From NCBI GenBank assembly GCA_964035545.1, contig OZ037771.1, forward strand, positions 15,223,289 to 15,287,288: DNA of 64,000 nucleotides, given 5' to 3'. This DNA comes from Bugula neritina. Its lineage: Eukaryota; Animalia; Bryozoa. Shown one piece after another: positions 29,345 through 58,513 of the stretch. The position numbers were made by a program, and so were the translations under genes. Under the pieces are notes generated by a model. The model worked only from the letters and a program-made list of their open reading frames with translations, was not told the DNA's origin and made no database searches. How positions within the stretch are numbered: the first letter of the stretch is position 1; every line of letters starts with the position of its first letter.

Positions 29345-32300
29345 TTACCGAGGTTGGGGTGAGGAGTGATACGAGGGACTCCATTGGCTCTCGTTAAATG
29401 GACGTCGTTGCACGAATCTTGTAACAGGAGTGTAAATTCTACCAGAAGTATTTTTAAAATAATAATTATTACATGTAAAAACATCACCTCGTGGAAATTC
29501 CACTGAGGAAAAATTGACTATGCGCTATTTACTATACACTATGCACTAAGCACTAAGTGAACATTCAGTTAAGTTACGGACAGTAAAACTATCATGAGCA
29601 TAGCAATATAAATGTAAGCTAAAAGAAAAAGAAATAGCAAATACATATATAGTATAATAATATTATGTACAAATAGGTATATTCATATCTTAAAAGTTTT
29701 AATAGCAACATTGAAGTTATATACTATGAACATCTTTCTCGGGTGAAACACTCACTTGGCTCCGTTACTTCCTACTCGGCAACAGCTCCAGCAAATCAGA
29801 GCCACCGTAACAATAATCAAAGAAAGTACAGAATACCCAACGACCTCTACTTTCAACTCCCAGCTAACATCAGTGAAGTGTGTGCAGGAAGAGCTCACGG
29901 AGGTGGAGTTTCGGTAAGCATATATTATCTCAATCTGTGTGTCAGTCTGAGAGGTAGTAACGGGATGAGACGCGGTGAGAGGACCCCTGGTGGTGGCATT
30001 AGCTGACTCAGTATTGAACACTGCAACAGATGGCAAGTAGAAGTAAATACTTTAGGTGTATATAATATATACTTTGAGTGAATATGTATATGTATGTCTT
30101 CTTGCATACTAGAGTATACTATATGCCTTCAATTGTATTGAAAGGTCAGATGCTAAAATACACGTAAGAGCAATAAGCGGTGATCAGATATCTAAACATA
30201 CTCTTGCAGTTCTTCTATTGTCCTCAAGCTCAATGCAACACAAAAATAACAAAAATAGTAAAAAGAAACTTTGAAAGAAATACAAAAACGTTATTTGGGT
30301 TACTCAATGTCATCACAAATGTAACACTAACCATCTGTCTTGCAGAGTTTCCCAAAAAACTCAGCTGGACACTCACAGTGGATGTCATCTACCCCGTCTC
30401 TACATGTGCCACTATTCAAACATGGGTTTTCCTCACAATCATCTGTGTTTATAGAGCAGACCTCACCTTCAAAACCTGAAAGAGATAGCTGGTTGTGTAT
30501 GTATGTGTGTGGCGTGTGTGAGAAAGAGAAGAGAGAAAAAAGAGAGAGAAAAGTGAGAGAGAGGGGGAGAGGGAGAGAAGGGGAGAGGGGAAGAGGGAGA
30601 TAGGGAGAGAGGGAGAGGGAGAGAGAGGGGGGAGGAGGAGGGAGATGGGGAGGGGGAGGGGAAGAGGGAGATAGGGAGAGAGGGAGAGGGAGAGAGGGAG
30701 AGGGAGAGAGAGAGGGGAGAGAGAGGGGGGAGAGAGAGGGGGAGGGAGAGAGAGAGAGAGAGAGGGAGGGAGGGGGGAGAGAGAGGGGGAGGGAGAGAGA
30801 GAGAGAGAGAGAGAGGGGGGAGAGAGAGGGGGAGGGAGAGAGAGAGAGAGAGGGAGGGAGAGAGAGATGGGGAGGGGAGGGAGATGGGGAGGGGGAGGGG
30901 AAGAGGGAGATAGGGAGAGAGGGAGGGAGAGGGAAAGAGGGAGAGGGAGAGAGAGAGGGGGAGAGAGAGGGAAAGAGGGGGAGGGGAAGAAGGAGGGAGA
31001 GAGAGAGAGAGGGAGAGAGGGGAGGGAGATGGGTAGGGGGAGGGGGAGGGAGAGAGAGGGAGAGAGAGAGAGAGAGAGGGGGGGAGAGGGGGAGAGGGGA
31101 GGGAGATGGGTAGGGAGAGAGAGAGGGAGAGAGAGAGGGGGAGAGGGAGGGGGAGGGGGAGGGAGGGAGAGGGAGAGAGAGAGAGAGGGGGGGGGAGAGA
31201 GAACACACACCTGGTGCACAGAGACACTTGAAGTCTCCCATCAAAGCGAGACAATTCCCTGAGTTGAGACAAGGTGCAGACTTGCAGGCATCAACCTCCC
31301 ACTCACACTTTGTACCTGGGAGAGAAAAAAACACAATATCATTCCTCAGACACTAAAGAACACAGGTGAATGACTGAAAATTTCTTGTAGAGCTCTAATA
31401 AGTATCTAGTCATTAGTTAGTTAGTGGTTAGTTATTACTAAGTTAGTGAATAGTCAGTTACTTAGTTAGTAGTTAGTTACTGCGGGCTCAACTCAGATCA
31501 AATTAATTATTTCTTCCAAGTTTAGAGTGTTGTCTGAAAGGGGTTTAGTTTTACCTTGCCACCCAGGTGAACAGGTGCAGGTGAAGCCACCTAAAATGGC
31601 CTCACAGTTGCCATGGACACAAGGGTTGCTATGACAATAGTCTATCATCAGCTCACAGCTGCTTCCTGTATACCCTGACTCACAGTGACAAAGATGTCTA
31701 CCAGGTTTGTAGGCACAGTCTGCATGATCTCTACAGCCAGGCTGTGTGCACAGGCAGGCAGCATCTTCAATCCCCTCGTAGCATTGTCTGACAGCCGGAG
31801 GGAATGAAGAGCAGTTGGTGAGCATCAAATTACAACAAGTTCAGACAGACAGACACACATGCAAATGAGTGCCTATCACATGACTATCAAGGAAATCACC
31901 CTCACACAGGTGATTGCAAGACTCACTGAATGTACAGTATCACTTTGACAAGTTTTGACAAGAAATTAAAAACATTGTTCAAACAAAAGTGTAACCAAAA
32001 CTGATAAAAATAACAAAATGAATTTTTTTCGGAGATTGTGTGACTGTAAAAGAAAGTATTCTGCAAGCTGGACCACAAAAGGTGAAGGATAAAATTTTTT
32101 TAAATACTAAACCCTCTACTATACAAACTCTATTCTCAAAGTACTTGTAGTTACTATGGGTTTATAAAATGAATCTTTACTACGACATAAAAACCAGACA
32201 AGTTACCCGTGGCCACTGCATGGGTTTCCCGCACATTCGTCCGTATCTGTCTCACATCTCTTCCCGGAGAAACCTGCTGGGCAGTCGCACTGGAAGTCAG

Positions 32301-56300: not shown

Positions 56301-58513
56301 GACTAGTGGGTGTGACTAGTGAGTGTGACTAGTGGGTGTGACTAGTGGGTGTGACTCATGTGTGTGTGACTAGTGTGTGTGACTAGTAGGTGTGACTAAT
56401 GAGTGTGGACTAGTGAGTGTGACTAGTGGGTGTGACTAGTAGGTGTGACTAGTAGGTGTTGCTAGAGGGTGTGACTAGTAGGTGTGACTAATGAGTGTGG
56501 ACTAGTGAGTGTGACTAGTGGGTGTGACTAGTGGGTGTGACTAGTAGGTGTGACTAGTGAGTGTGACTAGTAGGTGTGACTAGTGAGTGTGACTAGTAGG
56601 TGTGACTAGTGGGTGTGACTAGTAGGTGTGACTAGTGAGTGTGACTAGACTACAATAGATCATGTAGCTGCTAGATTCACATAGTTCTGGCATACTCACA
56701 GTCCTTCCAGTCTTTCATTCAGTTTATTAGCCAGAAACATTCTTCTTTTAATGCTAAAGAGGGGACTTTTGCTGAGTACTCTGCATATGCAATAGATAAA
56801 TAAAGAACACAGGCTAAATAAATGTCATGGTGATAACGGAATTATTCCAATTTCATGTTAACATGTGAGAGTTATCTTTTCGATTATTAATTTTAACCAA
56901 ACACTTTCTGGAATTTATAAAGGATAATTAATTGGTGAAAGCAACATAGGAGGGAGGCAGGATGTTATATAATTACTAGTAAAGAATTACCTAAATTACA
57001 GAATTTTTCAGAGTGTTTAAAAGAATTCAGAATTTTCTAGAAGAGTTTCAGAAGTTAAAAAAATACAAATAAGTTCATAAAACTTAAGTTACACATCACC
57101 CGTGAAACTTCTCCCAAATGAGAGTTGAAACACAAAGTCTTAGTAACTTACAGATCAGTTAGGGAAGGGGCGCGACCAACTTGTTCAAGAACCTCAGCTA
57201 AGTCTTCCAGCCTGGACTCGTCAAAACGTCTAAAAATATTTCACCAGTTGAGAATCTGTACAGGAGTGTAATGAAGGGGGACATATTATAAGAGTTATAG
57301 ATAACAGCTAATTAAAGGGGTATAGTAAGGGGTGTGCTATCAGAACTATGGGGGACAGGCAGGCAGGGGGACAAACTGAGAAGTGACAGTAATATCATAA
57401 TTATACCATTATTCAATATATCCCACTGATTTTATGAGAGAAAATACATAATTATTAGCAAATACAGGAAGTGTATAACCTGTAGAGCATGTAGAAAGTG
57501 TAGAAAGTGCAGAGCATGTAGAAAGTGGAAGGCATGTAGAGCATGTAGAAAGTGTAGAGCATGTAGAAAGTATAGAAAGTGTAGAGAGTGTAGGAAGTGT
57601 AGAGAGTGTAGAAAGTGTAGAAAGTGTAGGAAGTGTAGAGAGTGTAGAAAGTGTAGAAAGTGTAGGAAGTGTAGAGAGTGTAGAAAGTGTAGAAAGTGTA
57701 GAGAGTGTAGAAAGTGTAGAAAGTGTAGAGAGTGTAGAAAGTGTAGAAAGCTATACTTACAAGTAGGATAAGCTACTAAAAATCTGGTCGTTAAAATAAT
57801 TTTCTGGAATTTCTACAATGTCAGTTTCGATGAACATTCTACAAAATAAATTGAGTAACATGTATTCAGTTTAGAGTGTAGTACATAGTGTTAGTATACT
57901 GTAGTACATAGTGACAGTACACTGTAGTACATAGTGACAGTACACTGTAGTACATAGTGTTAGTATACTGTAGTACATAGTGTTAGTATACTGTAGTACA
58001 TAGTGCTAGTATACTGTAGTACATAGTGTTAGCATACTGTAGTACATAGTGAGTTAATACACTCACAATGTTGTCAGCTGATCATCTGGTAGCCCAGCAA
58101 AGTCCACTCTAGGCTCTCCCAACACATACAAAGGGCTACTCAACACAGTGCTGTAAACATCAGGAGAGTTAATTATGGTTACTATGTTTACATATCAATT
58201 GCTTGTTACAATATAATATTATAAACTTCTTCAAGTAATAAAATGAAACTCTTATACATGTTAGAGTCTAGACAGTTTGTCGTGTTTCAAGTATACAGCG
58301 TGTGTGAACTTACAAAAATCTTGTTGAATTCGGCAGATCAAATTGATGATCTGACAACCTCAGCCAGCCTGTATCTTGGCATACGATGTTGTCAGCTGCA
58401 GACGTCTCAACTATGCTGTAACATTGGCACTCCTCGCAGATGTCCTGAGATACCGCAGCTTGGGGGGTCAACAGTAAAAGGAATGCCACCCTTAGAAACC
58501 ATGCTGTAGCCAT
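29345..58513 (-). CDS. Giant type-I transmembrane LRR/EGF/SRCR-like/MAM receptor-like protein, 63 coding exons, ~3,358 aa
   Basis: Manually chained GT-AG exons with compatible phases sum to 10,077 nt and end in TAA at 29347-29345. Signal peptide [22 protein letters not shown]; LRR exons 58513-51321; EGF 49901-46008; SRCR-like 45767-40900; EGF 40870-35512; MAM 35241-33420; EGF 33420-30332; [24 protein letters not shown]; last exon 29438-29345. Confidence 0.85.
30520..31200. repeat. Polypurine (GA/GGGGA) tract filling an intron
   Basis: Direct reading; source of P/S/L-rich spurious ORFs. Confidence 0.95.
33420..35241 (-). other. MAM domain (exons 35241-35074, 34715-34571, 34234-34123, 33546-33387)
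   Basis: CDFESSLC..W....P.YDHT....KGYYL...W....ISFE....VALDDI. Confidence 0.85.
35260..35508. repeat. 24-bp intronic minisatellite (CTGAGTATCTACACAGAGTATAGC, ~10 copies)
   Basis: Fills the intron between exon ends 35512 and 35241. Confidence 0.95.
42530..43100. repeat. 10-bp intronic satellite (TACAYAGTAA)
   Basis: Direct reading. Confidence 0.95.
43375..43780. repeat. 14-bp intronic satellite (AGTGACTAGTAGTG)
   Basis: Direct reading. Confidence 0.92.
44900..45245. repeat. 16-bp intronic satellite (GTGTACGTCTGTATGY)
   Basis: Direct reading. Confidence 0.95.
47538..47733. repeat. 31-bp minisatellite that duplicates the exon end plus donor
   Basis: Sense unit CCTTATATG|GTAAGTATRTTACTCATAGCACT, ~6 copies. 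Confidence 0.92.
48891..49409. repeat. ~20-22-bp minisatellite duplicating the acceptor (ACTCTGTRCTGTAG|ATAT), followed by (TA)n up to the next donor
   Basis: Direct reading. Confidence 0.92.
50917..51231. mobile_element. Possible MITE in the intron between the LRR and EGF blocks
   Basis: ATTATATTGTGAGTTCGACT ... AGTCGACCCACACATAATAAT imperfect TIR; central 11-bp hairpin GCTAGCTACTC..GAGTAGCTAGC. Confidence 0.35.
56296..56648. repeat. 14-bp intronic satellite (GTGTGACTAGTRGG)
   Basis: Direct reading. Confidence 0.92.
57481..57750. repeat. 9-bp intronic satellite (GTGTAGAAA/GTGTAGAGA)
   Basis: Direct reading. Confidence 0.9.

What the first reader, a model, noticed from the sequence alone, without database searches (positions are those of the whole stretch)
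29345..58513. Giant mosaic receptor: SP-LRR-LRR-EGF(9)-SRCR(5)-EGF(15)-MAM-EGF(10)-TM with no signalling domain
Seen: 63 exons chain without frameshift into ~3,358 aa with a signal peptide, a single TM and a ~40-aa tail. Established: LRR, SRCR, MAM and EGF modules are each used in pattern recognition or adhesion. The order does not match Toll (needs TIR), Slit (secreted, LamG/CT), Notch (LNR/ANK), Crumbs (LamG), DMBT1 (CUB/ZP) or LGR/GRL101 (7TM). Inference: this is an undescribed lineage-specific receptor or adhesin. It holds a Toll-like double LRR head far from the membrane on a long EGF stalk, with scavenger and MAM modules along the way. Candidate roles are innate immunity, allorecognition or settlement. 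The ORF track hides it as dozens of fragments.
Basis: partly seen in the sequence, partly recalled or inferred. Interest (0 to 1): 0.85.

Follow-up and report, generated by a model that had tools for sequence, protein, structure and literature searches.

The report
Giant mosaic surface protein of bryozoans
A moss animal (Bugula neritina) has one real, spliced, single-copy gene for a 3,300-residue membrane-anchored protein that strings together four common binding modules in an order I could not find described; it looks more like a conserved surface tether or co-receptor than a fast-evolving immune or self-recognition gene.

Summary
The gene is real. I rebuilt it as 62 minus-strand exons (58513-29345), 3,307 aa, no internal stop: signal peptide, two LRR blocks, 9 EGF, 5 SRCR-like, 15 EGF, MAM, 10 EGF, one TM, about 43-aa tail. 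The organism is Bugula neritina. Spliced RNA contigs confirm ten introns, including the key LRR-to-EGF joint 51321/49901. A sister lineage keeps all splice sites of exons 1-58, with pN/pS about 0.2-0.4. Its NCBI draft annotation cut the gene into three hypothetical proteins, one cut caused by a 1-base frameshift, probably an assembly error. At least four more distant, unnamed lineages keep exons of the SRCR-EGF region (40-77% identity). Only SRCR 1 passes the Pfam cut-off; SRCR 4 and 5 and the MAM are degenerate; SRCR 2 and 3 rest on motif only. It fails membership of Toll, mega-thrombospondin and Uif by test, and of Slit, Notch, Crumbs and DMBT1 by architecture. Single copy and purifying selection argue against allorecognition. 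Best reading: a long apical tether or co-receptor without its own signalling domain. Function is untested. The scan had not noted this gene on other DNA, but it noted several other mosaic receptors in this genome.

The parts
29345..58513 (-). Whole gene: 62 coding exons, 3,307 aa type-I membrane protein
   Evidence: frame; RNA joints; splice sites kept in sister lineage, exons 1-58
58448..58513 (-). ATG and signal peptide (aa 1 to about 22)
   Evidence: sequence read directly; ATG and hydrophobic core kept in sister lineage; no signal-peptide predictor run
53723..58447 (-). LRR block 1 (exons 1-10, to aa 407): N-cap, roughly 11-12 repeats, C-cap; mostly phase-2 introns
   Evidence: Pfam LRR_4/LRR_8/LRR_1 over cut-off in exon 8; motifs; RNA joints for introns 7-10
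51321..53357 (-). LRR block 2 (exons 11-17, aa 408-764): second N-cap, roughly 8 repeats, LRRCT
   Evidence: Pfam LRR in exons 13 and 16; exon 17 matches LRRCT caps of NgR2, CD180, TLR8 weakly, E 0.05-0.1; RNA joints; exon 15 donor corrected to 52006 by RNA
49902..51320 (-). Intron 17 (1,419 nt), the LRR-to-EGF joint; holds a high-copy element of about 405 bp (50848-51254) that a DNA run shows both present and absent
   Evidence: RNA contig of 4,384 nt in run X2 joins 51321 to 49901 (tables 5 and 8)
46008..49901 (-). EGF block 1: 9 long, thrombospondin/cubilin-type EGF units (CxxCPxG), aa 765-1231
   Evidence: cysteine pattern; exon 18 best PDB match is thrombospondin-2, weak, E 0.16
40870..45767 (-). 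Five SRCR-like units (exons 27-37, aa about 1233-1789); unit 1 clear, units 4 and 5 degenerate, units 2 and 3 motif only
   Evidence: unit 1 Pfam SRCR 31.8 bits, cut-off 26.1, CD163 hits; unit 4 E 1.9e-4, orthologue E 5e-4; unit 5 Atlas SRCR clusters 0.91-0.93, orthologue E 0.004; self-alignment
35512..40869 (-). EGF block 2: 15 thrombospondin/cubilin-type EGF units, aa about 1790-2606
   Evidence: orthologous exons 37-38 at 49-77% identity in distant loci
33417..35241 (-). One degenerate MAM domain over exons 50-53 (aa about 2607-2788); lacks the second cysteine pair
   Evidence: only hit of an HMM built from 25 MAM matches of this genome, 16.3 bits, E 3e-7 for the single target, reversed control blank; no Pfam hit exon by exon
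30332..33416 (-). EGF block 3: 10 compact Notch/Crumbs-type EGF units, aa about 2790-3188, with 2 O-fucose, 2 O-glucose and 3 Asp/Asn-hydroxylation consensus sites
   Evidence: Pfam EGF/hEGF/EGF_CA over cut-off; motifs
29756..30020 (-). Exon 61: Ser/Thr-rich stalk (34% S+T), transmembrane helix (about 29844-29788), Cys-Cys just inside
29345..29438 (-). Last exon: end of the about 43-aa tail with one YxxPhi motif (YTPV); no TIR, kinase, ankyrin, NPxY or PDZ-binding end. Alternative: exons 29618-29578 plus 29502-29345 give a 78-aa tail, also without a domain
   Evidence: no RNA or sister-lineage data for this exon

Best explanation
One conserved, single-copy gene encodes a very long type-I surface protein that works as a tether or co-receptor, not as a self-sufficient signalling receptor. 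Shown: gene structure, splicing of the LRR head onto the EGF stalk, domain order, single TM, short domain-less tail, purifying selection. Inferred: the 34 EGF units make a stalk of up to roughly 100 nm that holds the double LRR head through or above the glycocalyx or cuticle. The LRR head, SRCR-like cluster and MAM give three spaced protein- or matrix-binding sites. The tail only anchors, clusters (Cys-Cys) and may recycle the protein by endocytosis (YTPV). The most likely job is to link an epithelial surface to extracellular matrix or a neighbouring cell, or to organise partner receptors, as giant apical EGF proteins such as Drosophila Uninflatable do.
For: Single copy by three exon searches of the genome (one search finds only weak generic EGF hits elsewhere). 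pN/pS 0.18-0.37 in every block, LRR head 0.24-0.25. Exons 33-38 are kept in order in distant lineages, with the same donor after the SRCR-5 exon. No signalling domain in either tail version, and no TIR hit near the locus. The overall design (over 3,000 aa, head modules, membrane-proximal Notch-type EGF run, TM) parallels Uif (PMC3340373). The SRCR units are degenerate rather than canonical tandem repeats.
Against: No expression, localisation or ligand data; the function rests on analogy. LRR and SRCR are classic pattern-recognition modules, and the SRCR block is the fastest-evolving part (pN/pS 0.37; 56/44 against 173/223 changes, Fisher p 0.03). Purifying selection does not exclude an immune role.
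Confidence: 0.5

Rival explanations
1. Microbe-capture or pattern-recognition co-receptor: the LRR head and SRCR cluster bind microbial ligands (perhaps the bryostatin symbiont), and the protein either signals through a separate TIR-only partner, as proposed for Hydra LRR proteins, or internalises the ligand.
For: Hydra HyLRR-2 fused to a human TIR responds to flagellin (PMC6043800). The SRCR block evolves fastest. YxxPhi motif in the tail. No TLR was found in a B. neritina transcriptome (PMC8609888). It is transcribed in runs labelled symbiont metagenome.
Against: Single copy, no tandem array; LRR head under the same purifying selection as the stalk. The head sits some 2,400 residues from the membrane, which suits coupling to a TIR partner poorly (inference). 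The genome appears to hold its own LRR-plus-TIR gene (LRR hits at C2:16.736-16.738 Mb, TIR at 16.735 Mb, same strand). The SRCRs are degenerate.
Confidence: 0.25
2. Modulator of Notch or another developmental receptor: the membrane-proximal Notch-type EGF run, with O-fucose and O-glucose sites, binds a receptor in cis, as Uif does.
For: Ten Notch-type EGFs next to the TM, with glycosylation consensus sites; precedent in PMC3340373.
Against: Such EGF runs and sites are common in unrelated matrix proteins. No DSL domain. None of Uif's other domains is present. It does not explain the conserved head.
Confidence: 0.12
3. Allorecognition determinant for colony fusion or kin-biased settlement.
For: Colonial animal; surface protein with a short tail; EGF repeats occur in tunicate self-recognition proteins (own knowledge).
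Against: No paralogue cluster; pN/pS well under 1 in all blocks; only about 3% non-synonymous divergence between two lineages. Known allorecognition loci are hypervariable (own knowledge).
Confidence: 0.05
4. Two or more adjacent genes, as in the NCBI draft annotation (79-aa LRR piece, 1,127-aa piece, 1,084-aa piece), for example a secreted LRR-EGF-SRCR protein and a separate EGF-MAM-TM protein.
For: The draft annotation splits the locus in three. RNA depth rises about four-fold from LRR exons to the first EGF exons in run X1, which could mean a second promoter. Joints beyond exon 19 were not seen directly.
Against: The LRR-EGF joint is spliced in RNA. The draft's second cut is a GGGG-to-GGG loss in exon 40, absent from another assembly of that lineage. 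No second signal peptide or hydrophobic segment. Short, phase-matched introns with conserved sites throughout. 3' bias also explains the depth.
Confidence: 0.06

Closest known systems
Mega-thrombospondin (PMC6526912)
   Same: Over 2,700 aa, signal peptide, long N-terminal LRR region, thrombospondin-type EGFs, a MAM/ConA-like domain late in the chain
   Different: No cadherin, type-3 repeats or TSP-C here; has SRCR-like units and a TM. The genome has a separate mega-TSP-like locus (LRRs at C1:33.207-33.208 Mb upstream of TSP_C at 33.188-33.189 Mb)
Drosophila Uninflatable (PMC3340373)
   Same: Giant (3,557 aa) single-pass protein with head modules, many EGF repeats and a short intracellular part; best functional analogue
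   Different: Uif has C-type lectin, CUB, CCP, FA58C and HYR domains; none is seen here, and the paper lists no LRR, SRCR or MAM for Uif
mcc-type Toll receptors and Hydra LRR-only proteins (PMC8609888, PMC6043800)
   Same: Two capped LRR blocks with an internal C-cap/N-cap junction; like HyLRR-2, no TIR
   Different: No TIR; second LRRCT lies about 2,480 aa from the membrane; second LRR block is long
Slit / vasorin (own knowledge)
   Same: Capped LRR blocks followed directly by EGF
   Different: Slit has four LRR blocks, LamG and a cystine knot and is secreted; vasorin is small, with one EGF and FN3
SRCR superfamily receptors (CD163, DMBT1; survey PMC10855680)
   Same: Tandem SRCR-type units with EGF and TM; SRCR with EGF and with MAM are known pairings in that survey
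   Different: Units are degenerate; no CUB or ZP; the word LRR did not occur in the survey's text or held supplements (one file cut)
Cubilin / thrombospondin EGF arrays, Notch and Crumbs EGF arrays (own knowledge)
   Same: Two EGF styles: CxxCPxG type in blocks 1-2, Notch type in block 3
   Different: No CUB, LNR, ankyrin or LamG; no ERLI-type PDZ end

Membership tests
Toll-like receptor (mcc type) | Two LRRCT clusters with LRRNT in the ectodomain | tested here: met
   exons 10, 11 and 17 cysteine patterns; (weak E-values, but all hits are LRR proteins)
Toll-like receptor (mcc type) | Cytoplasmic TIR domain | tested here: not met
   tail 43 or 78 aa, no Pfam hit; no TIR_2 match near C7:15.25 Mb
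Mega-thrombospondin | Signal peptide plus long N-terminal LRR region, over 2,700 aa | tested here: met
   about 760 aa of LRR, 3,307 aa in all
Mega-thrombospondin | TSP type-3 repeats and TSP-C lectin domain | tested here: not met
   no DxDxDG repeat motif; TSP_C matches only on C1 and C4
Mega-thrombospondin | Central cadherin domain; secreted | tested here: not met
   the chain is accounted for by LRR, EGF, SRCR-like and MAM segments, and has a TM; no cadherin HMM was run on the locus
Slit | Four LRR domains, LamG, C-terminal cystine knot, secreted | tested here: not met
   two LRR blocks, no room for LamG, TM present
Notch | LNR repeats and intracellular ankyrin repeats | tested here: not met
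   exon 61 and tail give no Pfam hit
Crumbs | LamG domains among EGFs; tail ending in a PDZ-binding motif | tested here: not met
   tail ends PQPR; non-EGF segments are SRCR-like and MAM
Uninflatable | C-type lectin, CUB, CCP, FA58C, HYR domains | tested here: not met
   none found in the exons scanned; FA58C scan of the genome has no hit at this locus
SRCR superfamily (broad sense) | At least one SRCR domain over the Pfam cut-off | tested here: met
   unit 1 as spliced in NCBI protein KAF6039572.1 (P0027:486-607): 31.8 bits, cut-off 26.1
SRCR superfamily (broad sense) | Canonical group A/B cysteine set and SRCR fold in all five units | tested here: inconclusive
   units have 4-7 Cys, first group-A Cys often missing; AlphaFold models too poor (pLDDT 51 and 32)
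DMBT1/hensin | CUB and ZP domains after the SRCR array | tested here: not met
   segments after the SRCRs are EGF and MAM
Any family with this full domain order | Architecture search with the full-length protein (CDART/InterPro) | not testable with these tools

The most novel reading that the evidence does not exclude
A bryozoan-wide, ancient single-copy receptor family with an undescribed LRR-LRR-EGF-SRCR-EGF-MAM-EGF-TM order that reaches through the cuticle to select microbes (such as the bryostatin-producing symbiont) or to read neighbouring zooids, acting through a separate signalling partner and tuned by a spliced antisense RNA over the LRR-EGF joint.
Probability: 0.1. Interest if true: 0.8.

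Novelty: new variant of a known kind. Interest (0 to 1): 0.42.

Why it matters
Bryozoan surface biology (colony integration, cuticle attachment, symbiont uptake) has almost no molecular handles. A conserved, expressed, single-copy 3,300-aa surface protein that public annotation has broken into three hypothetical pieces is a concrete candidate to localise and knock down. It also shows that degenerate SRCR and MAM modules are missed by Pfam counts of immune genes. The limit: new orders of common extracellular modules are frequent in marine invertebrates, this genome has several others, and no new mechanism is shown.

Tried and rejected
Long hits P0005-P0012 of the representatives search: rejected as chance repeat proteins (LRR, RCC1 or no domain). 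P0038: a Sel1 protein, mis-clustered. Search with the NCBI fragment P0027, residues 470-1090: nothing at E 1e-6 among proteins of about 620-1,970 aa; full-length kin are outside the length window, so this says little. AlphaFold on the SRCR-5 exon and on P0027:680-930: low confidence, fold search uninformative. Local SRCR HMM from half-domains: too weak. Paper search for the run accessions of the distant orthologues: nothing, so their taxa are unknown. Mega-TSP derivation: considered, not supported. Acceptor 57255 for exon 4 and donor 52042 for exon 15: rejected (stop codon; RNA).
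Full report
Observation. Reading all minus-strand frames and splice sites between 58.5 and 29.3 kb gave a chain of 62 exons that translates to 3,307 aa with one terminal stop. All introns are GT-AG and short (72-1,419 nt, median 267). Intron phases follow the domains: 12 of the first 16 are phase 2, as is usual for LRR exons, and 30 of the other 45 are phase 1, as is usual for EGF exons. 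I could not find the extra exon, but order and counts agree: signal peptide, two LRR blocks, 9 EGF, 5 SRCR-like, 15 EGF, MAM, 10 EGF, a Ser/Thr stalk, one TM (aa 3248-3266) and a short tail.

Organism. The assembly is 216,009,554 bases, matching the 216.00-Mb Bugula neritina genome (PMC11480708). A 93%-identical exon peptide clusters with NCBI KAF6039572.1, 'hypothetical protein EB796_002135 [Bugula neritina]'. I take the organism as B. neritina.

Is it one gene? I laid two RNA-type runs (one sample, contigs only, a lineage about 4-5% diverged) and a third, unlabelled run that covers the introns and so behaves as DNA, on 49420-55400. Joints appear at ten predicted introns (7-11, 13, 15-18). 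One 4,384-nt contig runs from LRR exon 16 through the LRRCT exon, across 51321/49901, into EGF exons 18-19, and continues for 3,788 more letters off the stretch. If it follows the model it would reach exon 41; that part is inferred, not seen. The RNA moved the exon-15 donor to 52006. The draft assembly GCA_010799875.2 (locus L080) holds exons 1-58: every acceptor and donor is kept, there are no stops, and pN/pS is 0.24 (LRR1), 0.25 (LRR2), 0.24 (EGF1), 0.37 (SRCR), 0.20 (EGF2), 0.27 (MAM) and 0.18 (EGF3), at pS 0.10-0.15. The only frameshift is a GGGG-to-GGG loss in exon 40, which a JGI contig of the same lineage does not have. It explains why NCBI's annotation ends its 1,127-aa piece there. 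The locus is annotated as three hypothetical proteins. Exons 59-62 have no outside support. For the last exon, GC content favours the 29438 acceptor and a 43-aa tail over a 78-aa alternative; neither has a domain.

Domains. LRR: Pfam over cut-off in exon 8, near it in exon 13; exon 17 resembles LRRCT caps of Nogo receptor 2, CD180 and TLR8 about equally and weakly. EGF: blocks 1-2 are long units with a CxxCPxG signature (14 clear cases), closest to thrombospondin-2 in the PDB at E 0.16; block 3 is compact Notch type with Pfam hits over cut-off. SRCR: unit 1 passes the Pfam cut-off in the NCBI-spliced fragment (31.8 against 26.1 bits) and hits CD163. Unit 4 scores E 1.9e-4 and its distant orthologue looks more canonical. 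Unit 5 is placed with SRCR clusters by the ESM Atlas (0.91-0.93) and by weak PDB hits. Units 2 and 3 share only the central C-x-x-x-G-Y helix motif and spacing. MAM: no Pfam hit exon by exon, but an HMM made from 25 MAM matches of this genome finds exactly one region, aa 2647-2780 (16.3 bits; reversed control blank). Structure prediction was uninformative.

Relatives. Exon searches of the genome find no paralogue. The SRCR-5 exon finds short peptides at 40-50% identity in public contigs that fall into at least four groups, 36-54% identical to each other. Their contigs carry the neighbouring exons in the same order: exons 33-36 in L068, 34-36 in L007 and L067, 36-38 in L008 and L079, with the same donor after the SRCR-5 exon. 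The sources are unnamed metagenomes or sequencing runs. I could not identify the taxa; other bryozoans are my guess. These contigs are 1-3 kb, so conservation of the full order, including the LRR head, is not shown.

How it probably works. A single-copy gene under purifying selection in every block, with old exon structure, fits a structural or developmental surface protein better than a diversifying immune or allorecognition gene. The tail has only a Cys-Cys next to the membrane and one YTPV motif, so any signal must pass through a partner. I put most weight (0.5) on a long apical tether or co-receptor: an EGF stalk of up to roughly 100 nm holding an LRR head, with SRCR-like and MAM sites along it, binding matrix, cuticle or a neighbouring cell. 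This step is inference by analogy with Uninflatable (PMC3340373). Microbe capture is the main rival (0.25): HyLRR-2 offers a precedent for a TIR-less LRR receptor (PMC6043800), and the SRCR block evolves fastest (Fisher p 0.03). Against it, the LRR head is not accelerated, and the genome seems to have its own LRR-plus-TIR gene, although a transcriptome survey found none (PMC8609888). Notch modulation (0.12), allorecognition (0.05) and split genes (0.06) follow.

Comparison with known families. The closest published architecture is mega-thrombospondin: signal peptide, about 1,000 aa of LRR, a variable centre with cadherin, TSP-type EGFs, type-3 repeats, TSP-C and a MAM-like domain (PMC6526912). 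This gene lacks the defining type-3 repeats and TSP-C, has a TM, and a separate mega-TSP-like locus exists on C1, so it is not a member. It also fails Toll (no TIR), Slit, Notch, Crumbs, Uif and DMBT1. It belongs to the SRCR superfamily only in the broad sense; a 29-species SRCR survey that includes B. neritina does not mention LRR partners in the text or supplements I could search (PMC10855680). Paper searches for the combination found no description.

Verdict. This is a new arrangement of known modules, real and conserved, hidden by fragmented annotation, with no demonstrated function. Other notes of the scan list several more mosaic receptors in this genome (unchecked), so a new order alone is not rare here. 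Novelty: new variant of a known kind. Interest 0.42.

Noticed in passing
window 49920 to 51294 and 49920 to 52294 (+ strand): RNA contigs hold two joints that read as canonical plus-strand introns (donor GTAAGT at 49921; AG acceptors before 51294 and 52294). This suggests a spliced antisense RNA over the LRR-EGF joint. All three sites are kept in the sister lineage. The donor is also the reverse complement of the likely branch point of intron 17, so a reverse-transcription artefact is not excluded; contigs cannot show strand.
   Followed up: partly
window 50848-51254: High-copy element of about 405 bp in intron 17 (depth 13,000-44,000 against about 90); one contig of the DNA-like run lacks it, so the insertion looks polymorphic. 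Only weak terminal inverted repeats. The same intron is about 3.3 kb in the sister lineage.
   Followed up: partly
window 51321-51307 (-): Reading past the exon-17 donor meets a stop after three codons, so retention of intron 17 would give a secreted LRR-only protein. No evidence that this isoform exists. RNA depth is about 4 times higher on exons 18-19 than on the LRR exons in run X1.
   Followed up: no
window 1-16000 (-): Tandem inhibitor-of-apoptosis (IAP) genes: BIR domains at about 392-868, 6477-6794 and 15750-15974, a RING at 4275-4397.
   Followed up: partly
window 59400-62100 (-): NIPA magnesium-transporter gene just upstream on the same strand; same neighbour in the draft assembly.
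   Followed up: partly
window 23600-27000: Broken retroelement-like pieces on both strands (frames at 23845-24321 +, 25146-25556 -, 26030-26833 -) that look by eye like Penelope-type RT/GIY-YIG fragments; no Pfam hit.
   Followed up: no
G000:C2:16735240-16737767 (-): LRR hits in a 791-aa frame followed by a weak TIR_2 hit on the same strand: a probable Toll-like receptor, although a transcriptome survey reported none in B. neritina.
   Followed up: no
G000:C1:33187671-33208407 (-): LRR hits about 19 kb upstream of TSP_C hits: a probable bryozoan mega-thrombospondin.
   Followed up: no
G000:C4:5384266-5492937 (+): A 110-kb run of dozens of MAM-domain exons, probably one giant MAM-repeat gene; another MAM cluster lies at C7:15.163-15.169 Mb, about 55 kb before this window.
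   Followed up: no
L010:1-2017: The contig joins bacterial dTDP-rhamnose genes to the eukaryotic SRCR-5 exon at low coverage; probably a mis-assembly, since L067 and L068 show the exon in a normal intron context.
   Followed up: partly
window 33138-33189: A 24-bp tandem duplication inside exon 54 adds an 8-residue repeat with a cysteine to the linker; the exon is 6 nt shorter in the sister lineage.
   Followed up: no
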